64,000 nt of DNA, from contig NW_003314294.1 of assembly GCF_000143415.4 (NCBI RefSeq), forward strand, positions 367,402 through 431,401. The letters run 5' to 3'. A program made the position numbers and the translations under genes. Each line of letters begins with the position of its first letter. The stretch's first letter is position 1. Shown here one piece after another: positions 1,807 through 57,325 of the stretch. This DNA comes from Selaginella moellendorffii. Its lineage: Eukaryota > Plantae > Lycopodiophyta. The notes under the pieces were generated by a model. It saw nothing but the letters and a program-made list of their open reading frames with translations. It had not been told where the DNA came from and did no database searches.

Positions 1807-4464
1807 ATGCCCCCGTCGGCATCGAAAGCTCCAAATGCGACCGGAGCAGCGGAGGTAAGATACTCTGCTGCTAAACATTCGCCACTTACACCACCAATGG
1901 ATCGAGCCAAGGGAGGCCAGCAGCAACGTCACAGGCATCCTTTTCTTCTGCCCCAGCAGCAGCAGCAGCAGCAGCGCCAGTCTAGCTTTTCCCTGGGCTG
2001 CATTTTTGATAATCCGGTAGCGTTTGAAGACTCTTCGTCGGGTAGAAGGAAAATTGACTACACCGGCATCTCCAGTGAAGCGAGAATGGACATGCTCGAG
2101 TGCCAGATCAAAAGCGTGGACGCTTGGAACGGTGTGACGAGAGCGCCGGACTTGGTTTCCCCTGCACAGCAGCAGAGGGAGCTTAGGATGAAGATGAAGA
2201 TCCAAGCGCAGCAGCGTGAAGCCAAAAGGTGGAAACGGGATGGTGTGGGGGCTTCTCTTCATAAACAGGCAGCGGAGGTGGAAGACGCGAGCTATGATCC
2301 GGCGAGACCAGTGGCGATCCAGACTTGTAGGCGGAAGTTGTGCCTCGATGATCCGTTGACAACAGCAACGACGAATGACAAGGCAGGCTTTAACACCCCT
2401 CTTCTGGACGACTGCGAAATCTACTCGGACGTCTCGGACTCGGTCCCGGAGGATGTGGGCTTCAATGGTTTACCAGCGGCCAGATCAAGGAAAGAGGAGC
2501 GGAACACATCCGGGTTTTGCACGCCAGTTCGTGACGCTCTACAGTCGCGCGCTTGCTCGCCGATTAGTGACGATGGGACTGCCTCTTTGAGATCACTAAA
2601 TGCTCTAGACAATTCCATGGAAGCAGGCTGCTGTGGCATTGAGCTTGAGGATATTGGCACCGACACTTCGAGAAGGGAAAGCTTTCGGTCCTTGAAAGCT
2701 TGTGCCACTGCCCGAGAGGGGCCTTACTTCGTCTATCCAGGTTGGTCCATGTGGAGTAGGGAGCACTCGTACAGGTCCCTGACACAGGATAGTCCGCTCT
2801 CCAAGAATTCTTGCGCCCCGTCGATAAAAAACCTCCCGGGAGTCAAGACGCTGAGGGCGTCCCTCCGGCAGCACCTTGCAGCGGCAGCAGCGGGACAACG
2901 TCACATATCTTCTGGATCCGTGAAGAGATCTTCTAGCACCAACACCAGATCGTCGACAGTCTCAGAGAGTACCTCTATAAGAAAATCACGGAGGGGAGCG
3001 TCTACAACAAACGTTGCTTCGAAATGTGGGAAGTTTACTGTTGTTGAAGAGGCCAGAGTGCCACTGTTGAAGCCGCAGAGGACGGTGAGAAAGCACTTTT
3101 CTCCGAGAAAGCACTGGGAGCCGGTCACGTTTTTCAGGAAGGGGTTGAAGTCCCTGGCCTCGAAGGGATTCCCGCACGATGGCTTCAGCTTCCCGTCGGT
3201 ATTCCCGCTTCCAGGATGCGGCCTTCCTCGGCTCGATCAGAGCCACCTCATGAAGCCAAAGAGGTTACTCTCCGAGAAGCGACGAAGCCTGCTAGAGAAG
3301 ATCCAAGACTCCAAAAACCTGGACGCGACCACCTCTTTCACGGGCTACCTCCAGTGCATCCTCCGGCATGGTCTCACGAGCTACAGCTTCTGGATGGACG
3401 AACTTGACGAGGTACTCGTGGCGCGGCTAGAACAGGGAGATCGTCGAGACAAGTGCTTCTCGTTTTATACATGCAAAGGCAAGGACAAATCCGGGTGGCG
3501 GCACTGGCAGAAGATCCGGAAGCGAGTCGTCAACTTTATCGGGACGATGAGCTTCTCCTGCTGCATATACACGGAAGTCGACCTCAAAGGCGAAGTCATG
3601 CATTTCATGGACTCGGAGTTTTCACTTTTTGACGAGAGGCAACCAGCAAGCACTACTCCGCACCGGCGGACGCACCACTCCAAGTCAAGAGTTGCGTCAT
3701 ACTTGAAAGCTCTCCTGGGAAGCCCGTGGGAAGGTGGCGAGCACAGCGACGCAGGGATGAAGCCCAGGAAGGAGCTCGCAGCGATGGTGATCCGGGTGCC
3801 GCTGGAAGTGAGAAAGGCCAGCGTCACGGTTTCATGCCATCACGAGAAGTTCGCGCTGGAGAAGACGTCGTCCACGACCACGACGTGGAGCAGCATTGTG
3901 GGGGCCAAAGGCGAGAGCATTCACGTCGTACTACCAACAGGGGATCACGGCCATCCCACTTACGGTCTGGAAGGTCCTCGGCCCCTCGTGGAGCGATGGC
4001 GGTCTGGAGGACTGTGTGACTGTGGGAGCTGGGACTTGGGCTGTGGGATGGTCACGCTCTCCAAGGACAAGGACAGCAGCAACAGAGACAACGCAAGCTC
4101 GAGCTCCTCCTTGAATCTCGTCGTCGAGGTGAGGAACTCTTTGAGATCGTTTCAAACCTCTGGAGCTCATGATTTTTGGAAAAACTTTGGACAGGGTGTG
4201 AAGCGCAAGTTCGTGACGATGAGTTTGTCCCCGTGCCGCGAAGATGGTCTCTACCGCTTGAGCTTCCAGAGGCCGCTCATGGGACTCCAGGCATTCGCGT
4301 CGGCCGTGGCGATCCTCCACAGCAAAATCCACACTGGCGGAGAGGTGAGATATGGCAGCGCTAGCGAGACCAAGCTTCCCGTCACGCTCATCGCTCGTCG
4401 CGACAAGAGCTTGCGATCGTCGTGCCATCCAAATCCGCCAGTCTCGCCCATCGAAAGACTGTGA
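1807..4464 (+). CDS. DUF3527-domain plant protein of unknown function
   Basis: 885-aa ORF whose C-terminal region carries the DUF3527 hallmark GPRPLVERWRSGGLCDCGSWDLGC and LQAFASAVAILHS. Probable 66-nt in-frame intron at 4129-4194 (GT..AG). Confidence 0.85.
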   Translation: MPPSASKAPNATGAAEVRYSAAKHSPLTPPMDRAKGGQQQRHRHPFLLPQQQQQQQRQSSFSLGCIFDNPVAFEDSSSGRRKIDYTGISSEARMDMLECQIKSVDAWNGVTRAPDLVSPAQQQRELRMKMKIQAQQREAKRWKRDGVGASLHKQAAEVEDASYDPARPVAIQTCRRKLCLDDPLTTATTNDKAGFNTPLLDDCEIYSDVSDSVPEDVGFNGLPAARSRKEERNTSGFCTPVRDALQSRACSPISDDGTASLRSLNALDNSMEAGCCGIELEDIGTDTSRRESFRSLKACATAREGPYFVYPGWSMWSREHSYRSLTQDSPLSKNSCAPSIKNLPGVKTLRASLRQHLAAAAAGQRHISSGSVKRSSSTNTRSSTVSESTSIRKSRRGASTTNVASKCGKFTVVEEARVPLLKPQRTVRKHFSPRKHWEPVTFFRKGLKSLASKGFPHDGFSFPSVFPLPGCGLPRLDQSHLMKPKRLLSEKRRSLLEKIQDSKNLDATTSFTGYLQCILRHGLTSYSFWMDELDEVLVARLEQGDRRDKCFSFYTCKGKDKSGWRHWQKIRKRVVNFIGTMSFSCCIYTEVDLKGEVMHFMDSEFSLFDERQPASTTPHRRTHHSKSRVASYLKALLGSPWEGGEHSDAGMKPRKELAAMVIRVPLEVRKASVTVSCHHEKFALEKTSSTTTTWSSIVGAKGESIHVVLPTGDHGHPTYGLEGPRPLVERWRSGGLCDCGSWDLGCGMVTLSKDKDSSNRDNASSSSSLNLVVEVRNSLRSFQTSGAHDFWKNFGQGVKRKFVTMSLSPCREDGLYRLSFQRPLMGLQAFASAVAILHSKIHTGGEVRYGSASETKLPVTLIARRDKSLRSSCHPNPPVSPIERL

Positions 4465-8900: not shown

Positions 8901-10842
8901 GGAATAGAAGAACAAAATAGAAACATAGAAGAAAATAATAAAGAGGCAAAAGTGATAGAAGAAGAGGTAAAAGTAGAGGGATAAAGAGGAACAAAAGTGA
9001 GAGGAACGGAAGAAATATAAAAAAGTATGAGACAAGGGTTAAAAGCACACTTGGCATAATTATATCATAACTAATCTATACTAAGGATGAGGTTAAAAGC
9101 TTAACTCTACACAACCCACAATAATTATAATATAAGCTCGAGATTACCCACACACATAACTAAGTCCGCCTCATACAATGTATATGCGTGTCTACAATCG
9201 TTGTCATAAAGAATGAAAACTAGCTTTGCCACACAACACAAATATAGATAGCAACATATAGCAACAAACTAAGAAATAAAGGATAAAGTTGAGTTTATAT
9301 CAACTAATATGGAAAAAATAATAGGAGACCTCTTATTATAAAACAAGCTTGGAAAATAAACATTACACGAATTGATGCCGAATGAACCCCTTAATGATAC
9401 TCTCGAAAGAACAATAAAGGGGTTACTAACTTACTTGAAGGACCTTCTACTACTCGCGTGACTCTTCATTTCTAGGAAGCATCTCAGTGTCTAGACCTTC
9501 TACTGCAACAATATTAATAGGACATTGTTGACACTAAAGTCTCCACCCAAGAAATGAAAGTTGCTAATCTGCAAAACGTTAACAATGCCAATAAGTGTGA
9601 CAAACTTCATCATACACCCAATAGTGGACATTATAACCATGATTATGTCATTGCCCTTATTCTAGAACTTGGATAGCAATAGCATCAACCTCTATTGGAA
9701 CAAGACCATCTCTTATAGAAAGTGGAGCGAAAGGATATGCAACGAGAAGTGGAAGAGGTGATGTCTTATAACATTGTGCCAAATGAAGAGCATCATCAAG
9801 GGTAGCTAAAACAAGTGTATGTATAATTTTTATAAGATCTTGATAAAATGCTAGCCACAACATTCCCAACTTGATCCACTTTGATATATTTAGCTCTACA
9901 CAAAGTAAAAGGTTTCAGAAACAAATGCCAAATTGCATTACTAACTTGTAATACATTCTATCTCTCTCCCCTTAAATCAACTAAAAAATGAGCAATTATT
10001 TGATAAAAGAGCCCTTAATAGCTAATTTATTCCCATTTATCCCCTAATGTTTTAAGGATCTACAGTGACAGTATATTCAAATTTCATCCCATAATCACAT
10101 GTGCTACATAGATGGCCCTAAACGAAGACAATACAACTATTAGAAAGCATCATCACAATTGCCAACATATCCAAATGCGCATTTGAAGACATCTGGGAGA
10201 ATGCTCCAATCCTCATAAGTGGTTACACTCAAACTATTATATCATTGTAACATTGTTCTTTAAAGACACGTGGAAAACTCACTCAAACGTTGAGCATTAT
10301 CCCAATAATGATATGTGGCAATCACTGTAAAGTGATAAAACCAATGGTACACATAATCCCTAGGACGAGCTTTGGTCAGACACGAGGATTAACACTAAGA
10401 GCAAAAAGAGCTATACCTACCACTATCAATTAAGTCTGATTATTTAATTGTAACCACATAGCATTGAACAACTTGCATCAGCTGTTGCTCCAAAGTCAAA
10501 GGAAAAAGAAGCTGTTGCTTTGTTATGAAGATGAATAAAAAAGAAAAGGCAAAAAAGAAAAAATTGAGAAAATTATAAAGAAAGGGAGATTTAGATGATG
10601 CAAAAGCTAGATCTAAACCAAAATCCCAAATCTAAACACTCCTTAGAGACAACCAAAGTTGCCCCTCACCTCCACCAATATAAGTGCATGGAATATAAAA
10701 ATGAAATATAGAAATGTGTATACCAATTAGCCCAAAAACCCTAATTTATATATAAGAGTAAGTGGTCTAAATTGAAATCAATTCAGCAGCTATTAAAATC
10801 CTACTATGTTAATATTAGTATATGGTATTGTAGTCATACACT
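5941..10842 (-). mobile_element. Decayed full-length Ty3/gypsy LTR retrotransposon
   Basis: Stop-riddled minus-strand motifs: RT (KSDGSIHFSIDYH*LNKVT ~8600; DFIDDVLI ~8310), RNase H (VLAYPNYTRLFILHVD ~7880; NYSTTKKECL ~7730), integrase (GYHPQSNGLVE ~6680; WKGPYQI ~6285). Order is RT-RH-INT. PPT AAAAAGAGGGGATGA at ~6073-6087, similar degenerate LTRs at ~5945-6072 and ~10680-10842, and PBS TGGTGGAGGTGAGGGG at 10677-10662. Confidence 0.9.
9947..10108 (-). mobile_element. Solo LTR (162 bp) of the TRIM family at 11288, nested in the gypsy relic
   Basis: Reverse-complement match to LTR 11288-11449, with the same length and many C>T/G>A changes. Confidence 0.8.
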
Positions 10843-11003
10843 TGGACCTAAGCTATATTAATAAAATTATTTATTAATATTTAATTATATCCATAGATAA
10901 ATTTATTAATTATCATATTAATAAAAATATTTTATAGATTTTAGTGTATAATCTTGTAATAAATAATAATATATGGAGTTGCCATCAGATCTAATTAATG
11001 GCA

Positions 11004-11197
11004 TATAAGCTTTTGAATTTAGACTTTCCGGGAGGTCACCTAGCCCAATACTATTCAAACCTAAAAACACTTAACCCTAAATATCCTAAGACTTTTAACC
11101 GATTGAAAAAGAAGGTGCATTCTTATTCATGGGCCTTTTCCTTTTATACTTAAACCTTATAAATTGTTTCTCAAATCATTCTCTTTGGTTGTTTACA
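11004..11197 (-). mobile_element. Solo LTR of Cassandra-like (5S-containing) TRIM
   Basis: Reverse-complement match to the 5S-bearing LTR family (...ACTTTCCGGGAGGTCACCTAGCCCAATACTATT...). Flanked by a perfect 5-bp TSD, TGGCA. Confidence 0.85.
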
Positions 11198-11287
11198 TGG
11201 CAGCCATTCAATGGTTTATCTATCAAAGGGTTATTTTTCTAACCATGTTAGCAAATGGAAGGTTGCTAATTGCCTAGGGTGAGAGAA

Positions 11288-12469
11288 TGTAGCACATGTG
11301 ATTATGGGATGAGATTTGGATATACTGTCACCGTGGATCCTTGGAACCTTGGGGGATAAATGGGGATAAAATAGCCACTAAGGGCTCTCTCATCAAGCAA
11401 TTGCCCCTTTTCCAGTTGGCTTAAGGGGAGAGAGATAAGGTGCGCTACAGTTGGTATCGGAGCAAATGGCATGGGTTCGATTCCCATTGATTAGTGGCTA
11501 CTTAAAAGTATAATATACCCTTGAGCAAGGTATATTCCTACCCCTAAATTTGAAATCGTACGTATTGGGCATCCATGCATACGTCCTTCCTCTTGTGTGG
11601 AGTATCCACGGACGAAGGTATCCACCGTGGGACTGCGGTACGGGTGGATGACTATCTCACGAGGGCGTGAACTTGCAGGGAAGCGTGGTGGATTGTAAGC
11701 AACCAAAGGGAATAGCTTCCGTTCACGAGGGCATGAACTTGCAGGGAAGCGTGGTGGATTGTAAGCAACCAAAGGGAACGACTCGAGAGACGATCCATTG
11801 GGGTTCAAATATAAAGGGAAAGGGCCCATGAATAAGAGTGCACCCCCTTTTCCAATCGGTTAAGGGTCTTGAGATATTTGGGTTTAAGCGTCTTTGGGCT
11901 TGAATAGTACTGGGCTAGGTGACCTCCCGGGAAGTCCACCGAAGGTATCCACCGTGGGACTGCGGTACGGGTGGATGACTAGTTGCCTCACATGGAATAG
12001 CTGGTCTACACAATGAAAGGATTGGTAGATTGAGTGTGGAAATGGAGGTGCTGGTTCCCCTTGGCTCAGTAGGGGTTGTTAGTCAATAGTCAATGAGGAC
12101 ATTGACATCTCTGAAGGGGGGGTGAATGTAGCGCATGTGATCATGGGATGAGATTTGGATATATTGTTACCGTGGATCCTTGGAACCTTGGGGGATAAAT
12201 GGGGATAAAATAACCACTAAGGGCTCTCTCATCAAGCAATTGCCCCTTTTCCAGTTGGCTTAAGGGGAGAGAGATAAGGTGCGCTACAGAGAAGAAAGTG
12301 GGGTGAGTGTAGCGCATGTGATCATGGGATGAGATTTGGATATATTGTTACCGTGGATCCTTGGAACCTTGGGGGATAAATGGGGATAAAATAGCCACTA
12401 AGGGCTTTCTCATCAAGCAATTGCCCCTTTTCCAGTTGGCTTAAGGGGAGAGAGATAAGGTGCGCTACA
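11288..12469 (+). mobile_element. Young TRIM with 162-bp LTRs, a captured 5S-bearing LTR and an extra tandem 3' LTR
   Basis: LTRs TGTAGC..GCTACA at 11288-11449, 12127-12288 and 12308-12469. PBS TGGTATCGGAGC (tRNA-iMet type) at 11452 and PPT GAAGGGGGGGTGAA before 12127. TSD GAGAA lies before LTR1 and after both LTR2 and LTR3. No retroelement ORF inside. Confidence 0.9.
11881..11937 (+). promoter_or_regulatory. 5S rRNA-derived Pol III internal control region (A-box, IE, C-box) within a Cassandra-like LTR fragment
   Basis: GGTTTAAGCGTCTTTGGGCTTGAATAGTACTGGGCTAGGTGACCTCCCGGGAAGTCC is colinear with plant 5S rRNA AGTTAAGCGTGCTTGGGCGAGAGTAGTACTAGGATGGGTGACCTCCTGGGAAGTCC (consensus recalled from memory). 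Confidence 0.85.
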
Positions 12470-12779
12470 GAGAAGAAGGTGTTATGATGTGTCACATGCA
12501 ATATGTTGATCAACATTGACACTCATGGACACTTGCTATTCTCTAAGGAATTTAATAATTTTTTTGAGGAAATATATCTTCAATTTTTCTTTCAAAGTAC
12601 AATATTTGTTTTTTTTATTCTATTCTAATTTTGTTTTCAATGTAACAAAACTATGACAATTGAAATAGTGTTTTGTAATTGGGAAGCATATGCTAGGCAA
12701 TACCTAGTTAATATCATTTAAGATATATTAGTCTTTTTATATTAGTTTAACGTGTGAATGCCTAATAGAATACAAAATA

Positions 12780-14865: not shown

Positions 14866-15749
14866 ATGGCGGCATCCGGCGGTGGTGGGTCTCTTCCCCA
14901 GCAATTTGGAGCGGCCAACGGTGTCTTGGGTCGATCCAATTCGCTACTGGGAGGGCGATTGGGAAGCATGGCTCTCCCGCGGCAGCAATCGATCTATTCC
15001 CTGACGTTGGATGAATTCCAGAGCAGTCTGGGCGAGCCCGGCAAGAACTTTGGCTCCATGAACATGGACGACCTCCTCAAGAACATCTGGACAGCCGAGG
15101 AGAGCCAGGCCATGGCCGCCGCATTGTTTAGCTCGAACGATCCCTCCTCCTCTTCCGCGGGCGCCGTCGTCGCCGCTGAGGATCCCTCTCTCCTCCCCCG
15201 GCAGCCCAGCCTGGGCATCCAGCGCCAGAATTCCCTCACTCTCCTCCCCCTCCCGCAATCGCTCAGCGCCAAGACGGTGGACGAGGTATGGAAGGACATC
15301 GGGCCCCTGGACGGCTACGGTACCGCCGGCGACGCGGCGGTACCGCCCATGAAGCCGCGGCAAGGGACTTACGGCGAGATGACGCTCGAGGACTTCCTCG
15401 TCAAGGCCGGCGTCATGGCGCCCGACGCCATCGACCACGCGCAGGCCGGCTACTACCCGACCACCAGTACCGCGACGGCAAACGGCTCGTACGGAAAGGT
15501 GACGCGGGACGCCGCGGCGGTACCGGGCGGCGGGACGCCGATACTGGGCGGTATGACGGGCCTACTGCCCGGCAAGAAGGAACCGGTGGAGGTGAACGAT
15601 CCAATGCTGGGAATTGGGCTTGGGCCGGCGAGGAACAATCTCTCCTCCCCGAATGGATTCTATGCGGCGTCCAGCGCCGCGGCACAGGCGGCCAAGCATC
15701 AGGCGGAGTGGATCGAGAGCCAGTACAAGAATTCCACGGCGCTGGCGCA

Positions 15750-15781
<32 letters not shown>

Positions 15782-16610
15782 TGGCGGCATACAATGGCAA
15801 CGCGGCGGTATCGACGGGGCTGGGCATGGGACTCAACGGCGGTACCGCCGGCGGTGTGGTGTGCATCAAGGAGACGTCGCCCGGGAGCCCGCTATCGGAC
15901 GCGCTGGACCAAAACGGGGGCTATGGCGGGCTTTCCAACTATGGTGGCGGATTCGATGGCCCCCTCCGAGGGCGCAAGAGGATCCTGGACGCGCCGCTGG
16001 AGAAGATTGTGGAGCGGAGGCAGCGGAGGATGATCAAGAACCGGGAATCGGCGGCGCGATCGCGAGCGAGGAAACAGGTCCGTGATCTTTCAATCAAAAA
16101 AGCTGGTTTTTTGTCGCTCTTTGTTTACGCGAGTTCGTTGTCTCCAGGCTTATACAGTCGAGTTGGAGGCCGAGGTGACACAACTCAAGGAAGAGAACAT
16201 GAAACTCCGGAAAATGCAGGTAAGAAACGAGTTTTTCTTACGTGATTTCTCTGTGGGATCGCTTCATGAGTCGATCGTTTCGTTTCGTGGGCTTTCTCAT
16301 CTAAACCTCCCAAACGGTTTTGCTTTTCTGCTTTCCAGGAGGAGGAGAACATCAAGCGAAAGAAACAGGTAGCGTGATTCTCTTGTTCTCTCTCTCCTTT
16401 TCTCCTTTTTCTTTGTTCCTCTCATTTTCTCGGTTACGTGTTCTGCTGGCTCTCCTCCTCTCTCGAGCTCGAGTGCTTGTAGATCGAACAATCGATCGTC
16501 CCGCCACTGATCAACATCTCTTTTGCTAGCAGCAGGCCTTGGAAGTGATCACTCCAATGACCCAACACCTCCCAAAGATGCTCAAGAGAACGCTCACGGG
16601 ACCCTGGTAA
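14866..16610 (+). CDS. ABI5: Group A bZIP transcription factor (ABI5/ABF/AREB family)
   Basis: Conserved motifs C1 RQQSIYSLTLDEFQ..GKNFGSMNMDDLLKNIWTAEE, C2 RQNSL..KTVDEVWKDI, C3 RQGTYGEMTLEDFLVKAGV, basic region RRQRRMIKNRESAARSRARKQ|AYTVELE and C4 LKRTLTGPW*. Exons about 14866-16077, 16148-16219, 16339-16368 and 16530-16610. The symbol denotes the family, not proven orthology. Confidence 0.93.
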
Positions 16611-18556: not shown

Positions 18557-20224
18557 TTAGCCGCTTCTACAGATATTTGACATGAGCACGTAATTCCCGC
18601 AGCCTTTCTCCATTTCAAGCCCGCCACCATTCTCCGATTCTCCCAGAGACGAACCAAACGCGAGCCTCGCCAAATCCAAGTTCTTCCCCAGCAGCGTTTT
18701 CCAAGTCACGGAGCTCGGCTCGAAAGGCATGCCGCGAATGAGCTCCAGCGCCTCGTCCAGCCGGTTTGCGCGGCCCAGGAGATCGATCACACAGTGGTAG
18801 TGCTCGATCCGGGGGCTCACTCCAAACCTGGAGCTCATCTCCCGGAAGAACTTGGTGCCGATGTCGACGAGCCCCGCGTGGCTGCACGCCGAGAGCACGC
18901 ACAGCAGCACAGGGCCGCTTGCCGGGACTTTCTCGTCGACCATCTTGTGGAAAAACTCGAAAACTTTGCCGCTGTGATCCCCCTGCCTGCTGTATCCTGC
19001 TATCAACGCGGTCCAAGTCACTAAATCCGTGCTTGCGATCGAGTAGAAGAGCTGCTCGGCGTCCACCATGCTGCCACACTTTCCATAGAAATCCACCAGG
19101 CCGCTTTGCAGCACCTCGTTCTTGCTCTCCAGCCCACGCCGGCAAATCTCCCGATGGACTTCTCGGCCAGTTTCTAAGCTCGGGACTATCGCACAGGCTT
19201 TGAGGACGGCAGCAAACGTTCGAGCGTCTGGAGCTACGTTTGTGGACTTCATGAGCTCAAAAAGCCGTAAAGCCTGCTCGATCTCTCCGTTTTCCACGTA
19301 TCCCAGCAGCAAAGTGTTCCAGGAAACCACGTCCGGATGCTCGATCCGGTGGAAAACTTCACGAGCTCCCCGCAAGTATCCACACTTGACGTACATATCG
19401 ATCAAAGTATTCGCCACCAAAAGCTCCGAGGAAAACCCGGCCTCGGAAGCTTGAGTATGAAGAACCTCCCCCATCTCCAGAGCTTGATCGATATTCTTCG
19501 CAGCGATGGTCGAGCAGGCCTTAACAGCAGCGGCAAACGTGAGAGCATTGGGCCGGCAGCGATCTCGTCTCATACGCTGGAAGACCTCCAGAGAAAAATC
19601 GCCATCGCCATCTTGGACGTAGCCCAGCATGAGAGCCGTCCAAGACACCACGTCGCGATGAGCCATGGTGTCAAACACTGCCTGGGCGTCTCTCACGCTT
19701 CCACATTTCGCGTAGACGTCGATCAAAGCATTGGCGACGAACAAATCTGCTGTGGCAGAGCCGAAACTCCCATGAGCTCGAGCTCTAGAGTGTAAATCCA
19801 TGGCCCTCTCCAGAGATTTCCACTTGACGACGAGCTCTGGCGCGGAAACGAACGCTCCCACCTCCCTGGCGGCTAGATTAGAGCACGCCTGGAGCGCAGC
19901 CACGAAGCTGTGCGAATCGCGGGACGCCATGGCCGAGAAGATTTCCAGCGCGACCTCTTCCTGGTGATTTTGAGCGTACCCCAAGACGAGTGCGTTCCAG
20001 GCGACGATTCCCGGATGGGGGATTCGATCGAAGACATCGCGAGCCTCGGCCATGCTCCCGCATTTGGCGTACATGCTGATGAGCGACGTCCGGATGTAGG
20101 GATTGGAGCAGCCGCCGCTCTGGATCGCGTCAGCATGGATCCGCCGCCCTGATTCTAGATCCCTGGAGCCGCCGCACGACCTCAATTGCGCTACCAACGA
20201 AGCGATGCTGCCGCTCTTCGCCGT
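18557..20224 (-). CDS. PLS-class PPR protein with E domain (organelle editing-factor type); no in-frame ATG at the N-terminus
   Basis: P-L-S motifs (SLISMYAKCGSMAEARDVFD, DVVSWTALMLGY), plus VLSACSHAGLVD, EHYHCVIDLLGRANRL and YVLMSNI. The frame opens at TAG ATC ACG GCG, with ACG at 20224-20222. Confidence 0.8.
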   Translation of the reverse strand, partial: TAKSGSIASLVAQLRSCGGSRDLESGRRIHADAIQSGGCSNPYIRTSLISMYAKCGSMAEARDVFDRIPHPGIVAWNALVLGYAQNHQEEVALEIFSAMASRDSHSFVAALQACSNLAAREVGAFVSAPELVVKWKSLERAMDLHSRARAHGSFGSATADLFVANALIDVYAKCGSVRDAQAVFDTMAHRDVVSWTALMLGYVQDGDGDFSLEVFQRMRRDRCRPNALTFAAAVKACSTIAAKNIDQALEMGEVLHTQASEAGFSSELLVANTLIDMYVKCGYLRGAREVFHRIEHPDVVSWNTLLLGYVENGEIEQALRLFELMKSTNVAPDARTFAAVLKACAIVPSLETGREVHREICRRGLESKNEVLQSGLVDFYGKCGSMVDAEQLFYSIASTDLVTWTALIAGYSRQGDHSGKVFEFFHKMVDEKVPASGPVLLCVLSACSHAGLVDIGTKFFREMSSRFGVSPRIEHYHCVIDLLGRANRLDEALELIRGMPFEPSSVTWKTLLGKNLDLARLAFGSSLGESENGGGLEMEKGCGNYVLMSNICRSG

Positions 20225-21621: not shown

Positions 21622-23460
21622 ATGGCTCCCCCTGGACGCGCTGGTGCTGATCTAGATGGTAGGGATTACTGGAGCGCCATCGTCGCCGGGTTCTTGGAGC
21701 TCTTCATCGCCTGTCTCGTGCTCCTAACGGCCGGCGTCTCGCTCCTCGCCTCCAAGCTCATCAAGATCTTCGACCTGCCGTATCCATGTACGTATCTGGG
21801 GCTCCAGCACGAGCGATCGGTGCTGTGCGAGCAGCACAGGAGGCTGGCGCTGCTCAATCTCCAGCTGCATGACTCGTGTGGCGAGTGCTTGCGAGAGCTG
21901 ACGGCGGCGCGAATCGAGCAGAACGCGCGAGTTCTTCCGCTCTTCCAGGAGCCGCGCGTGAGGGAACTTCACGATGGAAGGGGCGACGATCACCATGACA
22001 ATGAAGAGGACGAGCTGGGTGATGACGGATTTGGGACCGAAGCGATCGCGCACAAGGTGACGAGCGTGGCCGTGGACGACAAGAAAAATCCGGAGGTGCC
22101 GTCGCCTAGAGTTGGAGCTACAGGAGATCGTTGTGTGAAGCGAAAGTTTGCGAAGATATTCGTGGAGGAGCTTCCGCATGATCAGGTTTCGTCCGGCGTG
22201 AAATCTTCCGAGGAGGAGAAAGATAGGGGCGATGCTACCTCGGATCTCTCCGTCGAGAGCGTCAAGGCAGCATTCCAAGCGGAGAAAGACGCTCTGAACT
22301 CACTTTATGTGGAGCTCGAGGAGGAAAGGAATGCGTCGGCCATAGCTGCCAACGAAGCCATGGCGATGATCACTCGGCTCCAGGAGGAAAAGGCAGCGGT
22401 TCAGATGGAGGCTCGTCAGTACCAGAGGATGGTTGAGGAGAAAGCGGAGTACGACCAGGAGGCTATCACTCTTCTCAAGGAGATACTCTTCAAGCGAGAA
22501 CAGGAAAAGTTCGTGCTGGAGAAGGAGGTGGAGTCTTATCGAAAGCGGCTACTGCCCGCGAGAGATGGCGACGACGTCGACGACTGGCTTCCATCGAGGC
22601 TGCTCCTCGAAGGTGGTGGTGGTGGTGGTTTCGGTGCGGGCCAGAGAAAACCAACCGAGCTTTCACGTCGGCAAGGTACCAATCTTCTCGAGGACTTCGA
22701 TCGGGCGAGCTCGCATCACTCCGGGAGTGTATCCGGCGACGAAGCCACAGGGAATGGAGCGGAAGAGCTGGGCTTTCAACGCAACGCAAGCGCTGCAAGT
22801 CCGGGTGGTGATTATGGTGGCGATCCAACAGCGCGTGGTGATATCGATCTCGATCGAGGAAAACGTAGCGATCAAGTGGAAGAAGCTTTGAGCAACGGCA
22901 ACTCCGACCTTGATCTTCGAACCACCTCCATGGTCATGAGAGACAACTTCCGATTGGCCATGGAAAACGACATCCGAGAGCTAACGTCGAGATTGCAGGT
23001 GCTCGAGGACGACAGGCTGCTGCTCACGCAGGTTGTGCAGTCGCTCACGGCCGACAAGCCGGATCATCTCCGAGAGCTCGCGCAACACTTTCGACTCAAG
23101 AAGGCCGCCGCCGACCTCGCAGTTCCTCCAGTCTCTCAGGTACTTGGCTGCCATCACGAATGCATTTTAACATCCTAGGCCAGCTCCGAGCGCGCGAGAG
23201 AGAGAGGGTGATTGGATTTTTTCGTTCTCTACTGTTTTTTCTAGAGAGTGTGGGTGTGTGAGTTCTAGAGGGGGAGAGTAAAGCTATGTCTCGTTGCTTC
23301 GTTTTCTTTCTTTTTTCTCTGGGAGAGAGGTTTCTAGCTCTTCATTTTGTGCAATAAATAAGATCCTCTCGGGCGGCGTTTATATGAAACTTTCTGGTGG
23401 TTTCTTGTGTTCTTGCAGGTGGTCACGAAGAAACGAAGAATGGAAGGAAGCTTTTGGTAG
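21622..23460 (+). CDS. Myosin-binding protein (GTD/Zein-binding DUF593, MyoB family)
   Basis: N-terminal TM followed by F.LP.PC, and coiled coil LYVELEEERNASAIAANEAMAMITRLQEEKAAVQMEARQYQRMVEEKAEYDQEA. Donor at ~23140; the last exon (23419-23460) is tentative. Confidence 0.88.
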
Positions 23461-38408: not shown

Positions 38409-40337
38409 CTAAGATTCATAGCAGCAGAGATTGGAGAGCATCACGTATGGCGCGGACAGCCCACGCGTTAGAGGGCTCTCCGCCTCCATGGCGTTCTTGG
38501 CAGCCATGGCAGCCTTCTCCAAGCTCTCGTGGTAATTGGGCGCGCCCAGCAAGGCCGCCCACGTCTCCGCATCCGGCGCAAAAGGCATTGCCGCGATGAG
38601 TTCCTCCGCGTCGCGGATCCGCCCCGCTCGCGCGAGCGCATTGATAATGCACGAGTAGTGGTTCTTCGAGTGCGCCAATCCGTGTGCCGCGATCGCCAGC
38701 CCAAATTCGCGCAGCCCCTGCTCTCCCGCGTGGCCGCGCGCGGCTAGAACGCTCAGCAGCGTGATCTCGTCGGGCCGGAAGCCCTCTAGCGCCATGGATT
38801 CCACCAGCGCGATCGCTGACGCTGGATCTCCCGCCTGGGAGTATGCCGCGACGATCGAATTCCAGGATACGATGCTCTTGATCGGCATCGCATCGAAGAG
38901 CTCTCGCGCGCGATCCAAATGCCCTAGCTGGGCGTGCATGCTCAACAAGCACGTCCACGCCACCACGCCCCTCTCGGGCATCCTCTGGAATATCCCGTGC
39001 GAGCGGGGTATATTCCCGGCCGAGGAATATCCTTGGAGGATCGTGTTCCACGAGACATCGTCCCACTTGGGCATATTCTCGAACGTGGCATCGGCACCTT
39101 CCAGCTGGCCGTTTCGGGAGTAGAGAGCCACCATTGCGTTGTGCGAGACGATGTCTCTGTGGGGCATTGTCTCGAAGAGAATCTTTCCAGTGTGGAGATT
39201 CCCAGACTCGGCATATGCCGTAATCAGTGTGTTCCAGGAGATTACGTCCCAGCGTGGCATCCGGTCGAACATCTGCTGCGCATTCTGGAAGTGGAATTTT
39301 TCAGTGAATCCAGCCAGCATTGCGTTCCAGCTGATGGGATCTCTTCCATCCATCTCGTCGAAAATCTGCTTCGCCGATTCTGTGTCGCTCCTGTGGAACA
39401 ATGCCCGGATCATGAGCGTTGATGAAATTGTGTCTTTCTGCGGCATTGACTCAAACATGGATTGAGCTTTGTCCATCTCTCCGGTTTCAACGTGGCCAGA
39501 GAGAATGGCAGAAAATGTGATTGCATCCCTCTCTGGAATCCTGTTGAAGACATCGTAGGCTTCCTTGAGATTTCTGTGGTCTGAATAAGCTTGGATCATC
39601 GTGTTCCAAGAAACTAGGGTTTTCTCAGGCATCCAATCAAACAAGTTCTTAACATCATCCAAATGCCCAATTCCGGCATTCACTGCTATCATCTCGTTAC
39701 AAGAGACAACATTCCACTCTGGCATTTTTACAGCGACTTCTTTGGCTTCAAGTAACAACCTACTGTGATTTACTCCAGATACTGTGTTTCGAGAAGTGAT
39801 ATTCACCGAGGATGCCTGATTAAACACTTGGATTGTATCCTCCATTTTACCGCTTTGGGTAAATGCGGCAACAAGGATGATCCAAGAGAGTACGTTTCTT
39901 TCTGGCATTGAATCAAACAATTCCTTAGCTTCAACGTGATTTCCGTGGTGTGCATAGACAGTTATCATCGCATTGAAAGTTACCAGATCCCTCTTTGGCA
40001 TAGCATCAAACATGTTTCTCGCGGATTCCAGATGCCCATTCTGGGCATATGCGTGGATCATGAGGCTCCACGAGTATAGATTAAGTTGGCGGATGCCTAT
40101 GAATGCCTGGGACGCATCCTCCACGCTTCCAAGCCTTCCGTACACCTGGATCATCGTGTTCGCAAGAAACCTATTGTCGCAGTGATCGCTGTGGAGGATA
40201 TGGGCGTGGAGGCGCTTGGCATCGGCATAGTTTTTGCATTCTTTGAGGAGCTTGTGGAATCGGTCCTGCCCACGCAGCGCATTCATATCATTCGATGGAA
40301 TCGCCGGGGACGGAGCTCCAGCCCACCAAGGATTCAT
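38409..40337 (-). CDS. PLS-class PPR protein (SS-motif array, E domain)
   Basis: Intronless ORF of about 31-aa repeats (FD.MP..D.VSWN.MI.AY) ending HYSCIINALARAG..YVMLSNL. The start is either 40337 or 40286. Confidence 0.9.
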   Translation of the reverse strand: MNPWWAGAPSPAIPSNDMNALRGQDRFHKLLKECKNYADAKRLHAHILHSDHCDNRFLANTMIQVYGRLGSVEDASQAFIGIRQLNLYSWSLMIHAYAQNGHLESARNMFDAMPKRDLVTFNAMITVYAHHGNHVEAKELFDSMPERNVLSWIILVAAFTQSGKMEDTIQVFNQASSVNITSRNTVSGVNHSRLLLEAKEVAVKMPEWNVVSCNEMIAVNAGIGHLDDVKNLFDWMPEKTLVSWNTMIQAYSDHRNLKEAYDVFNRIPERDAITFSAILSGHVETGEMDKAQSMFESMPQKDTISSTLMIRALFHRSDTESAKQIFDEMDGRDPISWNAMLAGFTEKFHFQNAQQMFDRMPRWDVISWNTLITAYAESGNLHTGKILFETMPHRDIVSHNAMVALYSRNGQLEGADATFENMPKWDDVSWNTILQGYSSAGNIPRSHGIFQRMPERGVVAWTCLLSMHAQLGHLDRARELFDAMPIKSIVSWNSIVAAYSQAGDPASAIALVESMALEGFRPDEITLLSVLAARGHAGEQGLREFGLAIAAHGLAHSKNHYSCIINALARAGRIRDAEELIAAMPFAPDAETWAALLGAPNYHESLEKAAMAAKNAMEAESPLTRGLSAPYVMLSNLCCYES

Positions 40338-42565
40338 TCGCCAGGATCATCAAGTCTTGCGCCATCGCTGGGAATCTCACCCAGGGACGGCGAATTCACT
40401 CTCAGATTCTTAAGAGCAGGCACTCTAGCGACACGTTTCTAGCGAATCTCTTGGTGCAAATGTATGGGAAATGCGGGAGTGTTGACGATGCAGCGAAGGT
40501 TTTCGAGCGGATCAAGCGCCCTAACTCTTTTTCCTGGAGCATTATGATTCAAGCATATGCCCAAAACGGGCATCTTGCTCAAGCACAAGCTTTGTTTGAT
40601 CGAATGCCGGAAAAAAACCTGGAATCTTGGAATGCATTGATTACTGCTTATGCCAGATCTGGTAAACTGGAGAAAGCCCAAGAGATTTTTGACAGCATGC
40701 CTGTGAAGAACACCGTCACCATCAATGCGATGCTCTCCGCATATGCCTCAAACGGGCATATTGGCGATGCTTGGAATCTTTTCGAGACCATGGAGCATCG
40801 CGACCGAATATCCTGGAACACAATGCTTCAGGGATTTTCTCTCAGTGGTCAGCTTGCAAAATTAAAGGATCTTTTTGATGATATGCCATCTGCAGATGTA
40901 GTTTCATGGACTTGTGTGATTACAGCATATGCCCAACATGGGCATTTGGAATATGCCCGTGCCATGTTTGATGCGGCGCCCGTAAGGAACGAGGTCACCT
41001 GGAACTCCATGATCACTGCGTACGGAGAGAATGCCGATGTTTCGGAAGCAAAAGCTTTGTTTGATTCAATGCCAAATCCAAATGTTGTGTCGTGGAACGC
41101 TCTCGTCCAAGCCTATGTCAATGCAGATGATCTCCAAGGAGCAAAGGTGGTGTTTGATCGAATTCCGGAACCGAATGTTATTTCGTGGACCACCATTCTT
41201 GCTGCTTATGCCCAAAGCGGCCAACTTGAGAAAGCGAAGAGAATTTTCGAAGATATGCCGCAAAAGAACGTTGTTTCCTGGACTGTTATGCTCTCTGCTT
41301 ATGCCGAAAACGGGCATTTACGAGATGCGGAGATTCTCTTCGAGCATATACCACAAAAGAACAATCTGACTTGGAACTCAATGTTGCTGGCTTACGTCCA
41401 AAGAGGTGATATAGAGATGGCGAAGAGATTCTTTGACAAGATTCCTTCTCCATGTACAATAGCCTGGAACACAATGCTTCAAGTGTTTATCCAGCTTGGA
41501 AATCTGGACGAAGCTTTGGCTTTCTTTGAGCATATTCCCGATAAAAACTCCACGTCATGGACAACTATGATTCTTGCTCTCGCGAAGAATGGTCGAATAG
41601 ATGAAGCAAAAGATATGTTTGTAAAGTCACTACCTCTCTACGATCTTGTGTCTTGGACTGCATTGCTTGGCGGCTATGCTCAAACTTGCGATGGATTTGT
41701 GGAGGAGGCCAAAACAACCTTTGAAGCTATGCCAGAATGGGATATGGTAACGTGGAACACTATGGTCTCGGTTTATGGCTTGAACAATCGCCTAGAAAAT
41801 GCTAGAGCCTTGTTTGATTCCATGCCAGCATGGGATATAGTTACATGGAACACACTGCTTTCTATCTATGCCCAATCTGGATATAGCGAAGAATGTAAAA
41901 ACCTCTTTGAAAGTATGCCATTCTTAACAGCGATATCTGTAAATGCAATGATATTGGGGTGTGATTCTCTCCAGGAGTCCAAGAGTTACTTTGATACGTG
42001 CATACCTCCTGGAGAGAGGGATATTCTTTGCTGGAGTTCTATGATGCTTGCATATACCCGGGCTGGGCATATACTCAGAGCCAAGAGAATGTTTGATGGG
42101 ATGCCCGAAAAGGACTTGGTGGTGTGGAATATGATGGTGGAGGCGTATGGACAAGGTGGTCATGGAGACAACGCTGTGGAAGTGTTTAGAAAAATGGAGG
42201 TGGAGGGCATCAAGCCTGACAAGATTGCTTATGTGAGTGTCTTGGCAGCTTGCGGCCATGGAGGTCTTTTGGATGAGGCTTGTGCGAATTTCTCCAACAT
42301 GAGCGATGCGCATGGATATGTTCCTGAGGATCAGCATTTGTGTTGCTTGGTGGATGTTCTTGGGAGGACCGGGAAGTTGAAAGAGGCCGAGGAGTTGATC
42401 GAGGCTATGCCGTGTGAGATTGGATCCGTGGCCTGGGAGTGCTTGCTTGGAGCTTGTAAAATCTATAAGAATGCCGAGCATGGGCAAAAGGCAGTCCAGA
42501 AGATTGGAGCTTTGATACCAGAGAAGGCCACTTTGTACTTGTCTATTGAGGCTATATCCCAATAA
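40295..42565 (+). CDS. PLS-class PPR protein (SS-motif array, E domain)
   Basis: 756-aa intronless ORF with a long array of 31-aa repeats, ending HLCCLVDVLGRTG..WECLLGAC. Confidence 0.92.
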   Translation: MESPGTELQPTKDSFARIIKSCAIAGNLTQGRRIHSQILKSRHSSDTFLANLLVQMYGKCGSVDDAAKVFERIKRPNSFSWSIMIQAYAQNGHLAQAQALFDRMPEKNLESWNALITAYARSGKLEKAQEIFDSMPVKNTVTINAMLSAYASNGHIGDAWNLFETMEHRDRISWNTMLQGFSLSGQLAKLKDLFDDMPSADVVSWTCVITAYAQHGHLEYARAMFDAAPVRNEVTWNSMITAYGENADVSEAKALFDSMPNPNVVSWNALVQAYVNADDLQGAKVVFDRIPEPNVISWTTILAAYAQSGQLEKAKRIFEDMPQKNVVSWTVMLSAYAENGHLRDAEILFEHIPQKNNLTWNSMLLAYVQRGDIEMAKRFFDKIPSPCTIAWNTMLQVFIQLGNLDEALAFFEHIPDKNSTSWTTMILALAKNGRIDEAKDMFVKSLPLYDLVSWTALLGGYAQTCDGFVEEAKTTFEAMPEWDMVTWNTMVSVYGLNNRLENARALFDSMPAWDIVTWNTLLSIYAQSGYSEECKNLFESMPFLTAISVNAMILGCDSLQESKSYFDTCIPPGERDILCWSSMMLAYTRAGHILRAKRMFDGMPEKDLVVWNMMVEAYGQGGHGDNAVEVFRKMEVEGIKPDKIAYVSVLAACGHGGLLDEACANFSNMSDAHGYVPEDQHLCCLVDVLGRTGKLKEAEELIEAMPCEIGSVAWECLLGACKIYKNAEHGQKAVQKIGALIPEKATLYLSIEAISQ

Positions 42566-55356: not shown

Positions 55357-56691
55357 AAAATTCATTATAATATATAAATTTATAGTAATTTGTAAGATTA
55401 AAAACTTAATTTGATGCATATTGCACACAACAATATGTGGCTTGTTATTCCTGTTTAGTAATGCAATTGACCAATATGAAGTTTATAATTATAAATATAT
55501 TTGTAATTTATAACTACAAGATTAATCTTATTGCATAAGATGGTAGAATAAACTAGTATATACTAAAAAGTGTTTAGGAAAGTTTATAATTTATAAATGC
55601 AAAATTAATCTAAATGAATAGTAACTTTAGATGGTAGAATATCCTAGAATATCCAAGAATATTCTAGGCATATTCATTACCAACCAAAATATAAGTGAAG
55701 TTTAAATGAGGAAAAGAAAGAAAATAACTTAATAAAAGTTATAATATACATCAATTTAAACCTGGCAAGCTTTGGCTTTAAATAAGAAAATTTATATTTT
55801 GAGATCTAGGTGTAATATGACAATGCTATATACTATTATTAATATAGTGGGATTTTGGTAACCATCAAACTCTTTTTAATTTAGACCACTTACTTTTATA
55901 TATATTGTCTAGATATGTTGGTTCTTTTGTTTCTTAGAGAGTTCTTATTATGTGTTTTCCACATTGATAGTGATAAGGGGCACCTTTGATTGTATATGAT
56001 GAGTGGTTTGATTTGTGCTTTTGGTTTCAGATCTATCTTTTATATTCTAGATCTCTTTTTCTTTTATAACTTTTCAATTTTTTCTCTTTTTTTTCCTTCA
56101 TTTAATTTATCTTTATGGCAAAGTAGTAGCCTTTTCCTCTTCCTCTGACTCTAGAGTAGCAATTAGTGTAATTATTGAATGATGTATGGTCATAGTTGAC
56201 CAATTAAACTCATTTGATAGTGGCATTTATAATGTATGGTGCATTCTTATTGCCAACTGTTGCATCTAACTGGAGTTTTTATTTGGGAATCTTAGGGATG
56301 ATGTGTATTATTAGTTCAATCATTTTATGATGATTACCACTTATTATTCTTGGGATGATGCTCAACATTTACTCAAGTTTCCCATGTTTTTAAAGGATAA
56401 TATTATAGTGGTGTAATGGTTTAAGGATAGCCACTTATATGGACTAAAGCCTTATCTTAGATGTATTTAAGTACACATTTGGATTTGTTGATGATTGTGA
56501 TGATGCAATTCAACAATTGCATCATCTCCTTCAAAAGTTGTTTAAGTTAGTGATGTAATTTGGTATTTACTTTTGAAGTCAATTACTTCATATGGAGCTA
56601 AATATGCTAGAGCAAATCAAGTTGAAAATGTTATGGCTAATGCTTCATTAAAATCTTGTGAGCCTTATGCATGTATTTACTCTTACCATCC

Positions 56692-56888
56692 TATAAGCAA
56701 ACTAAAAAAATAATTCAAAAGATAATCTATAGGGGTTCAAATATAGAGAAAAAAGAGCTTATGAATAAAAGTGCATCCTTTTTTTCTAATTAGTTAATCT
56801 ACTTGGAATATTTAAAGTCAAATATCCTTTGATTTAAATAGTATTAGGCTAAATAACCTCCCAAAAAGTCCAAATCTAAGAGCTTACA
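56692..56888 (+). mobile_element. Old solo LTR of Cassandra-like TRIM
   Basis: Aligns to 11760-11937 plus the terminal AAATCTAAGAGCTTACA. The flanks CATCC and CACCT are consistent with a C>T-eroded TSD. Confidence 0.75.
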
Positions 56889-57325
56889 CACCTTTAATAA
56901 CACTCTTTGATTAACATAATGTTATGAGATATTTATTGCACAAATTTCAACTCCACTTTGTATAAAAGATGATCTTGTTCTAGTGGAAGTTGATGTTATT
57001 GTTGCCCATGTTCAAGGGCAAAGGCAAAAATGTGGTCAATGATTATTTACAATTGATGGTGCATTTGGTTTTTATTTCATGCTTTCTCCATGCTTATTAT
57101 AACTTTCTTATTCTAGGCAAGTATATAGCATATCATTGTGTAACTAAGAAGTTACATAGGTTTATAACTTTTCTATTCTAGGCAAGTATATAGCATATCA
57201 TCTTGTAACTAAGAAACTATATAGGTTTTTCTATTGGTCGGAGATATAATATGATAAGAACTCGTGATAATGTAGTGTATTTCTAGACGAGATATTAAAA
57301 CATGGCTATAAATGTAGAACCATTA

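What the first reader, a model, noticed from the sequence alone, without database searches (positions are those of the whole stretch)
11288..12288. Chimeric TRIM that has captured another TRIM's 5S-promoter LTR as internal cargo
Seen: a young TRIM (near-identical 162-bp LTRs, iMet-type PBS, PPT, TSD GAGAA) whose own LTRs have no 5S sequence. Internally it carries the purine-rich upstream region and almost the whole LTR (11760-11937) of the Cassandra-like family. The cargo ends exactly at the end of the 5S match (GAAGTCC) and lacks the last ~17 bp of the LTR. It has no 5-bp TSD but is bracketed by a ~42-bp direct repeat (11613-11654 and 11940-11981), and it includes a ~56-bp duplication of the PPT/LTR-start. 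It is the least eroded 5S-LTR copy here. Inference: capture by RT template switching between co-packaged RNAs rather than nested integration, giving a non-autonomous element a borrowed internal Pol III promoter.
Basis: partly seen in the sequence, partly recalled or inferred. Interest (0 to 1): 0.78.

Follow-up and report, generated by a model that had tools for sequence, protein, structure and literature searches.

The report
Chimeric spikemoss TRIM carrying Cassandra fragment
A tiny gene-less retrotransposon in the spikemoss Selaginella moellendorffii really does carry most of the end-repeat of a second tiny retrotransposon (the 5S-bearing Cassandra type), joined by copying errors rather than normal insertion. 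It is one example of a kind of chimera already described in plants, and nothing shows that the borrowed promoter does anything.

Summary
The anatomy is real. A TRIM lies in Selaginella moellendorffii with 162-bp LTRs (157/162 identical), an iMet-type PBS, a PPT and the TSD GAGAA. Inside it sit 285 bp that include 179 of about 196 bp of a Cassandra-like, 5S-bearing LTR. The insert has no 5-bp TSD, lacks the LTR's last 17 bp, and is bracketed by a perfect 42-bp repeat of host sequence. It also holds a 56-bp internal duplication.

- A third LTR, made by a 181-bp tandem duplication that includes flanking DNA and so came after integration.
- A significant 24-nt motif shared by the two LTR families.
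- The promoter's position downstream of the PBS, so RNA made from it could not replicate.

Integrase-mediated nesting is excluded. Copy-choice during reverse transcription is the best explanation (about 0.5). The donor is another iMet-primed TRIM, and the insert's left edge was reached twice at the same base, as at a physical template end. DNA-level repair after integration is not excluded (about 0.25).

The decisive test, other copies or the other haplotype, could not be run. Chimeric TRIMs with a donated LTR are already published for sugar beet. This scan has also noted other Cassandra chimeras elsewhere in this genome. Interest is modest.

The parts
11283..11287 (+). 5' target-site duplication GAGAA
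   Evidence: the same 5-mer follows LTR B (12289-12293) and LTR C (12470-12474)
11288..11449 (+). Host TRIM 5' LTR (A), 162 bp, TGTAGC...GCTACA
   Evidence: 96.9% identical to B and to C; two private transitions
11452..11463 (+). PBS TGGTATCGGAGC, matching the iMet-type PBS at 11/12
   Evidence: canonical TGGTATCAGAGCC is printed in PMC4717578
11464..11612 (+). Host internal domain, 5' part, including a tRNA T-arm-like hairpin at 11468-11487
   Evidence: no other match in the window; T-arm match 14.2 bits, E 4.3, not significant
11613..11654 (+). Left copy of the 42-bp host direct repeat
   Evidence: 42/42 identical to 11940-11981
11655..11722 (+). Start of the insert: 2 filler bases, a first copy of a 56-bp block (37 nt of purine-rich non-LTR sequence plus LTR bases 1-19), then 10 filler bases
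   Evidence: the 56-bp block matches 11723-11778 at 55/56
11723..11759 (+). Second copy of the 37-nt purine-rich sequence immediately upstream of the captured LTR
   Evidence: family origin not demonstrable in this window
11760..11938 (+). Captured Cassandra-like LTR, bases 1-179 of about 196; the last 16-17 bp are absent
   Evidence: 82-84% identical to copies at 11004-11197(-) and 57761-57956(-); it departs from all four copies right after GAAGTCCA
11838..11937 (+). 5S-rRNA-like segment of the captured LTR, with TATAAA at 11810-11815 and a T4 run at 11848-11851
   Evidence: Rfam RF00001 20.3 bits, E 0.56, below the gathering score of 38
11940..11981 (+). Right copy of the 42-bp host direct repeat
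11982..12126 (+). Host internal domain, 3' part, ending in the PPT GAAGGGGGGGTGAA (12113-12126)
12127..12288 (+). Host TRIM 3' LTR (B)
12119..12481 (+). 181-bp tandem duplication (2.0 copies, 97% identical, no indels). Each unit holds the last 8 bp of the PPT, an LTR, GAGAA and 7 further flanking bases. It creates LTR C at 12308-12469
   Evidence: TRF. It contains the TSD and flank, so it arose after integration

Best explanation
A TRIM of a 162-bp-LTR family (about 674 bp without the insert) integrated here with the TSD GAGAA. Its internal domain holds a 285-bp mosaic copied from a Cassandra-like TRIM: 37 nt of upstream purine-rich sequence plus LTR bases 1-179.

The most likely origin is copy-choice during reverse transcription inside a virus-like particle that held templates of both families. 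In this model, minus-strand synthesis on the host RNA:
1. left the host at 11940;
2. copied the Cassandra-derived template down to a physical 5' end;
3. re-copied its last 56 nt after a 10-nt filler;
4. returned to the host RNA 42 nt behind the point of departure, which duplicated those 42 nt.

The chimera then integrated as one unit. Later, at the DNA level, a 181-bp tandem duplication added a third LTR.

Shown: the anatomy, the exclusion of integrase-mediated nesting, and the post-integration timing of the 181-bp duplication. Inferred: the RT stage, co-packaging and the order of switches.

The captured 5S-type promoter is best read as a passenger. It lies downstream of the PBS, so its RNA could not be replicated.
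For: - The insert has no 5-bp TSD, a truncated LTR end, and non-LTR sequence at its left end, and is bracketed by a perfect 42-bp host repeat. This excludes ordinary integration.
- The donor is another TRIM with the same replication hallmarks. It has an iMet-type PBS (57747-57758), 5-bp TSDs (TAATG and TGCCA), TGTA...TACA termini, and a significant shared 24-nt LTR core (z about 7, 0/1000 shuffles). That is expected for a co-packaged template and unlikely for random filler DNA.
- Both copies of the 56-bp block start at exactly the same base (11657 and 11723) behind unrelated bases, and that base lies 2 nt from the edge of the insert. A physical template end predicts this. By chance it would occur about 1% of the time.
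- Short fillers of 2, 10 and 1 nt sit at the joins, and TCCAC and CTCAC microsimilarity lies beside both outer joins. This resembles RT-switch chimeras (PMC5131818).
- Multi-unit read-through Cassandra transcripts that contain whole internal LTRs exist (PMC7215508).
- The nearby inverted Cassandra-like solo LTR is only 82% identical, so it was not the donor.
Against: - Only one locus was available; no other copy or allele could be examined.
- The host segment is duplicated, whereas published LTR-mediated retrocopies replace host sequence.
- The internal duplicates differ at 1/98 sites against 5/162 for the LTR pair. This leans toward a younger, post-integration event but is not significant (Poisson p about 0.1-0.2, counts).
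- The locus has undergone at least one DNA-level duplication after integration.
- A canonical Pol III Cassandra RNA has only about 18 nt of R (Kojima). It would not carry PPT plus 179 nt of LTR in one piece, so a non-canonical template must be assumed.
- The 42-bp repeat's hairpin is no more stable than shuffles (z -1.5).
Confidence: 0.5

Rival explanations
1. Post-integration DNA-level event. A double-strand break or stalled fork inside the already integrated TRIM was repaired by templated synthesis (SDSA filler DNA or MMBIR-type switching) from an ectopic Cassandra copy. This left a 42-bp flanking duplication, short fillers and a partial re-copy.
For: - The same locus carries a clear post-integration 181-bp tandem duplication that includes the TSD and flank.
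- The internal duplicates are slightly less diverged than the LTR pair (1/98 against 5/162).
- Fillers and microsimilarity at the joins fit end-joining or replicative repair equally well.
- There is no constraint on which part of a Cassandra copy is taken, which fits the odd extent of the insert.
Against: - A random genomic donor would rarely be another iMet-primed TRIM. All TRIMs together make up 1.19% of this genome (PMC4717578).
- The only nearby Cassandra copy is 82% identical and was not the donor.
- A chromosomal donor has no physical end that would explain why both copies of the 56-bp block begin at the same base.
Confidence: 0.25
2. The chimera is an established, mobile subfamily, and the captured 5S-type Pol III promoter is active and useful to the element.
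For: - The captured LTR is the least decayed Cassandra-like copy in the window.
- It keeps TATAAA at about -28 and the 5S box A, IE and box C region.
- The intact LTRs, PBS, PPT and TSD show the element was competent when it inserted.
Against: - The promoter lies downstream of the PBS, so its transcript has no PBS.
- The 5S match is far below the Rfam threshold (20.3 against 38).
- No second copy was found in the window or in any reachable collection.
- No expression data exist.
Confidence: 0.08
3. Ordinary nested integration of a Cassandra element into the TRIM, later trimmed by deletions.
For: Nested TE insertions are common. Cassandra-like copies in this window insert with 5-bp TSDs.
Against: This needs at least three further independent events: loss of the 5' LTR and most of the internal domain, loss of the last 17 bp and the TSD, and creation of a perfect 42-bp flanking repeat plus the 56-bp re-copy.
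Confidence: 0.05
4. Assembly artefact that joined reads from two TRIM families.
For: The region is repeat-rich and has perfect short repeats at the joins.
Against: The insert is only 285 bp between unique host sequence, so a single read would span it. The junctions carry specific fillers rather than a repeat-mediated join.
Confidence: 0.03

Closest known systems
Chimeric non-autonomous LTR retrotransposons of sugar beet (TRIM-08 elements with an extra LTR donated by TRIM-01 or TRIM-05; PMC13570524)
   Same: A TRIM of one family carries an LTR donated by another TRIM family, and this is attributed to template switching or recombination.
   Different: Here the donated LTR is a 5S-bearing Cassandra type. 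It is truncated by 17 bp, comes with 37 nt of upstream sequence, is partly re-copied, and is bracketed by a 42-bp host duplication. The host plant is a lycophyte.
LTR-mediated retroposition by microsimilarity-dependent template switching (Tan et al. 2016, PMC5131818; maize Bs1; yeast Ty1)
   Same: Foreign sequence sits between intact LTRs with one outer TSD, and short fillers and microsimilarity mark the switch points.
   Different: The cargo is another retroelement rather than an mRNA. The host sequence is duplicated rather than replaced. The microsimilarity is offset from the joins by 3-5 nt.
Complex LTR insertions by template switching in Triticeae (Sabot and Schulman 2007, PMC1950507) and tandem or read-through Cassandra arrays (Kalendar 2020, PMC7215508)
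   Same: Abnormal strand switching in reverse transcription fuses two parental sequences into one inserted daughter element. Read-through Cassandra RNAs could supply a template that contains a whole LTR.
   Different: Those cases join whole elements at shared LTRs. Here a fragment is embedded in the internal domain.
Cassandra / TRIMp3 (Kalendar 2008; Kojima 2024, PMC10886601)
   Same: The donor family has TRIM size (631 bp), LTRs of about 196 bp with a 5S-like segment, an iMet-type PBS and 5-bp TSDs.
   Different: In true TRIMp3 elements the Pol III promoter sits in the LTRs, so the RNA includes the PBS. In this chimera it sits once, in the internal domain downstream of the PBS. The papers read here describe Cassandra from ferns and seed plants, not lycophytes.

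Membership tests
TRIM (terminal-repeat retrotransposon in miniature) | Two short direct LTRs with TG...CA ends, flanked by a 5-bp TSD | tested here: met
   162-bp LTRs, 96.9% identical, TGTAGC...GCTACA ends, GAGAA on both sides
TRIM (terminal-repeat retrotransposon in miniature) | PBS next to the 5' LTR and PPT next to the 3' LTR | tested here: met
   PBS 11452-11463 matches the iMet PBS at 11/12; PPT 12113-12126
TRIM (terminal-repeat retrotransposon in miniature) | About 1 kb or less, with no coding capacity | tested here: met
   1001 bp with the insert and about 674 bp without it. The longest ORF, 112 aa across the junction, has no relatives
Cassandra / TRIMp3 (the donor family) | 5S rRNA-derived sequence with Pol III control elements inside the LTR | tested here: inconclusive
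   Rfam RF00001 gives 20.2-23 bits in three copies, below the gathering score of 38. The 3' two-thirds of 5S is clearly aligned, and TATAAA lies at about -28
Cassandra / TRIMp3 (the donor family) | TRIM architecture with an iMet PBS and 5-bp TSD | tested here: met
   Element 57326-57956(-) has TSD TAATG and PBS TGGTATTAAAGA. Solo LTR 11004-11197(-) has TSD TGCCA
Cassandra / TRIMp3 (the chimera itself) | The promoter-bearing small-RNA sequence lies in both LTRs, so the transcript includes R-U5-PBS | tested here: not met
   The host LTRs have no 5S match at E<=1. The single 5S-like segment lies in the internal domain, downstream of the PBS
RT template-switch chimera (LTR-mediated capture) | Foreign sequence between intact LTRs sharing one outer TSD, with no TSD of its own | tested here: met
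RT template-switch chimera (LTR-mediated capture) | Microsimilarity or short de novo filler at the switch points | tested here: inconclusive
   Fillers of 2, 10 and 1 nt are present. TCCAC and CTCAC lie near both outer joins but are offset by 3-5 nt. No simulation was made
RT template-switch chimera (LTR-mediated capture) | The chimera predates integration (same junctions at other loci, or the chimera absent as a whole from the empty allele) | not testable with these tools
Scans were blank

The most novel reading that the evidence does not exclude
The chimera is a mobile subfamily. Because the two families share a 24-nt core at the predicted start/terminator (R-like) position, transcripts that run from the host 5' LTR to the captured Cassandra R-like motif could be reverse-transcribed into elements with hybrid LTRs (Cassandra U3 plus host U5). 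That would be a live route by which a Pol III 5S promoter moves from one TRIM lineage into the LTRs of another. It would offer an alternative to the proposed SINE3-insertion origin of Cassandra-type elements.
Probability: 0.07. Interest if true: 0.65.

Novelty: new member of a known kind. Interest (0 to 1): 0.3.

Why it matters
If the capture happened in a virus-like particle, it is physical evidence that this TRIM family and the Cassandra-like family are packaged and reverse-transcribed together. They would then share an autonomous helper, and Cassandra's helper is still unknown (Kojima 2024). It also adds a lycophyte case to the picture of modular reshuffling among non-autonomous LTR elements. 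As a single unresolved locus it does not change that picture. The promoter-borrowing idea has no mechanistic advantage as the element is built.

Tried and rejected
- Fetching the allelic or paralogous locus through the neighbouring bZIP gene.
- Looking for translated copies of the junction ORF among 5.8 billion proteins. There were no hits.
- Exact-pattern scans of metagenome and prokaryote genome collections for the host LTR. Both were blank, as expected.
- The scan's own notes for this family. They were blank by sequence, by relatives and by several word sets.
- Testing whether the host LTR is a Cassandra LTR without the 5S part. Only the 24-nt core is significant, and the heads and tails are not.
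- Testing whether the host internal domain is related to the Cassandra-like internal domain. It is not.
- Testing whether the 37-nt upstream block matches the pre-3'-LTR region of the window's full Cassandra-like element. The match is not significant.
- Testing whether the 42-bp repeat is an unusually stable hairpin that would stall RT. It is not (z -1.5).
- Testing whether the PBS-proximal region is a tRNA-like Pol III unit. There is only a T-arm-like hairpin (E 4.3), and ARAGORN finds no tRNA.
- Considering the nearby inverted Cassandra-like LTR as the donor. It was rejected at 82% identity.
- Kalendar 2008 and Maiwald 2021 are not held in the paper library.

Full report
**Source.** The window comes from the spikemoss Selaginella moellendorffii. 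The ORF at 14866-16245 is 98% identical to SELMODRAFT_443424 and 89% identical to SELMODRAFT_266892. The finding lies in an AT-rich, repeat-rich intergenic stretch, about 2.4 kb upstream of that ABI5-like bZIP gene.

**The host element.**
- Three copies of a 162-bp repeat with TGTAGC...GCTACA ends lie at 11288-11449 (A), 12127-12288 (B) and 12308-12469 (C). An old copy lies at 9947-10108 on the minus strand.
- A and B match at 157/162.
- All six variable sites among A, B and C are transitions. Two are private to A, two are shared by B and C, and one each is private to B and to C.
- A is followed after two bases by TGGTATCGGAGC. This matches the iMet-type PBS at 11/12; the canonical string is printed in PMC4717578.
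- B is preceded by a G-rich PPT.
- GAGAA flanks A on the left and B on the right.
- There is no coding capacity.
- This is a TRIM. S. moellendorffii is known to hold eight TRIM subfamilies and about 10,000 copies (PMC4717578).

**The third LTR.** Tandem Repeats Finder reports a clean 181-bp duplication at 12119-12481, with 2.0 copies, 97% identity and no indels. Each unit holds the last 8 bp of the PPT, one LTR, GAGAA and seven more flanking bases. Because the unit includes the TSD and flanking DNA, this duplication arose in the chromosome after integration.

**The insert (11655-11939).**
- It consists of, in order:
  - 2 filler bases;
  - a 56-bp block, made of 37 nt of purine-rich sequence plus bases 1-19 of a Cassandra-like LTR;
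  - 10 unrelated bases;
  - the same 56-bp block again (55/56 identical), continuing through the LTR to base 179;
  - 1 odd base.
- A perfect 42-bp repeat of host sequence brackets it, at 11613-11654 and 11940-11981. No such match is expected by chance.
- The window holds four other Cassandra-like LTRs:
  - a solo LTR at 11004-11197(-), with TSD TGCCA;
  - both LTRs of a full 631-bp element at 57326-57956(-), with TSD TAATG;
  - a solo LTR at 56692-56888.
- Aligned with these four, the insert begins at the family's TGTAAGC start. It departs from all of them immediately after GAAGTCCA, where they continue for 16-17 bp to ...TTACA.
- The insert is 82-84% identical to the best two copies.
- It is the least decayed copy by composition: GC 0.48, 6 CpG, and 13 of 68 transition-polymorphic columns in the decayed state against 25-46 in the others.

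**The 5S content.**
- Rfam's 5S model matches 11838-11951 at 20.3 bits (E 0.56, gathering score 38). Similar sub-threshold matches occur in two other copies, at 20.2 and 23 bits.
- The aligned part is the 3' two-thirds of 5S. From general knowledge of 5S genes, that part holds box A, the intermediate element and box C.
- TATAAA lies about 28 bp upstream.
- The family is therefore Cassandra-like, although the papers read here describe Cassandra from ferns and seed plants only.
- The host LTRs give no 5S match.
- The host LTRs do share a 24-nt core, CCCCTTTTCCA-T-GG-TTAAGGG, with the Cassandra-like LTR. This is significant (z about 7, 0 of 1000 shuffles), while the rest of the LTRs is unrelated.
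- In the Cassandra-like LTR this core sits at the start of the 5S-like segment and contains a T4 run. Kojima's account of Cassandra places the start and end of the Pol III transcript, with its 18-nt terminal redundancy, in the 5S sequence of the LTRs.

**How the insert got there.** Ordinary nested integration is excluded. There is no 5-bp TSD, the LTR end that integrase needs is missing, non-LTR sequence lies on the left, and 42 bp of host sequence is duplicated. Two copy-choice routes remain.

I favour switching during reverse transcription, for three reasons:
1. The donor is not random DNA. It is another TRIM with the same primer type, the same TSD length, similar termini and a shared LTR core. 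That is what a co-packaged template would look like. All TRIMs together are only 1.19% of this genome.
2. Both copies of the 56-bp block begin at exactly the same base, behind unrelated bases, and that base is 2 nt from the edge of the insert. A polymerase that twice ran to the physical end of a template molecule explains this. A chromosomal donor has no such end. By chance the coincidence would occur about 1% of the time.
3. Short fillers and nearby microsimilarity (TCCAC and CTCAC) resemble documented RT-switch chimeras (PMC5131818).

A template that holds a PPT region plus a nearly whole LTR is not the canonical Pol III Cassandra RNA. Read-through multi-unit Cassandra transcripts are documented, however (PMC7215508). 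A plus-strand strong-stop DNA with its primer still attached would also fit, but that is speculation.

Several points count against the RT route:
- Published RT-mediated captures replace host sequence rather than duplicate it.
- The internal duplicates are slightly less diverged than the LTR pair (1/98 against 5/162, not significant).
- The locus has demonstrably undergone a DNA-level duplication.

I therefore put the RT route at about 0.5 and post-integration templated repair at about 0.25.

**Function.** The captured promoter lies 375 bp downstream of the PBS. An RNA started at about 11838 would run through the host 3' internal part into LTR B, where the shared core supplies the next T4 run (12247-12250). 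It would have a PPT and short terminal redundancy but no PBS, so it could not be reverse-transcribed. The 'borrowed promoter' is best read as a passenger.

**What could not be done.** The decisive test is whether other insertions share these junctions, or what the other haplotype carries at this site. That needs the plant genome, and none of the collections on hand holds it.
- A protein-level search with the 112-aa ORF that spans the left junction found nothing.
- DNA pattern scans were blank.
- The scan's own notes hold no look-alike of this element.
- Those notes do list several other Cassandra chimeras on other pieces of this genome. I did not check them.

**Comparison with the literature.**
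- Chimeric TRIMs with an extra LTR donated by another TRIM family are reported in sugar beet (PMC13570524).
- Template switching as a source of complex LTR elements has been documented since 2007 (PMC1950507).
- This locus is thus a new member of a known kind. The odd details are the Cassandra donor, the 42-bp host duplication and the twice-used left edge.

**A lead not tested with tools.** By eye, the 37-nt block (11657-11693) resembles the 5' half of initiator tRNA-Met in sense orientation.
- It shares a 9-nt exact run, plus collinear CAG, GGCG, GAG and TCA/CA blocks, with two printed sequences: the 31-nt 5'-tiRNA-iMet in PMC13625232 and a wheat small RNA in PMC5411081.
- The resemblance begins at the block's first base.
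- If this is real and specific to this event, it would point to the primer tRNA having served as a template, which would strongly favour the RT route.
- If it is a normal feature of the family's pre-LTR region, it is a separate curiosity.
- The window cannot decide between these.

Noticed in passing
window 11404-11427, 12243-12266, 12424-12447 (host LTRs) and 11843-11866 (Cassandra-like LTR): Two otherwise unrelated TRIM LTR families share a 24-nt core (CCCCTTTTCCA-T-GG-TTAAGGG; z about 7, 0/1000 shuffles). In the Cassandra-like LTR it lies at the predicted Pol III start/T4 terminator position. It may be a shared R-like or helper-recognition motif.
   Followed up: partly
window 11657-11693 and 11723-11759: By eye, the 37-nt purine-rich block upstream of the captured LTR resembles the 5' half of initiator tRNA-Met in sense orientation, starting at the block's first base. 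The comparison was with sequences printed in PMC13625232 and PMC5411081. No statistical test was run.
   Followed up: partly
window 11468-11487: A perfect elongator-type tRNA T-arm hairpin (GGCAUGGGUUCGAUUCCCAU) lies 5 nt downstream of the host PBS. The Rfam tRNA match is 14.2 bits, E 4.3, which is not significant on its own.
   Followed up: partly
window 10999-11202 (-): A Cassandra-like solo LTR (11004-11197) with a perfect 5-bp TSD TGCCA lies in inverted orientation only 80 bp upstream of the host TRIM's TSD. At 82% identity to the insert it was not the donor.
   Followed up: yes
window 57321-57961 (-): A full 631-bp Cassandra-like TRIM with TSD TAATG and a decayed iMet PBS. Its internal domain holds 44-67-bp tandem repeats (TRF) that resemble the LTR's 3' end. 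The first ~35 bp of its 3' LTR do not align with the 5' LTR.
   Followed up: partly
window 9651-10354 (-) and 56301-57027 (+): Two copies of a ~700-bp repeat, 73-78% identical. One is interrupted by an old solo LTR of the host TRIM family (9947-10108). The other is interrupted, at a different position, by a Cassandra-like solo LTR (56692-56888, decayed TSD CATCC/CACCT).
   Followed up: partly
window 1807-4464, 18557-20197, 38409-40337, 40295-42565, 21622-23178, 14866-16245: Intronless-looking genes surround the repeat-rich stretch. They include three PPR proteins, a DUF3527 protein, a zein-binding-domain protein and an ABI5-like bZIP 2.4 kb downstream of the TRIM.
   Followed up: partly
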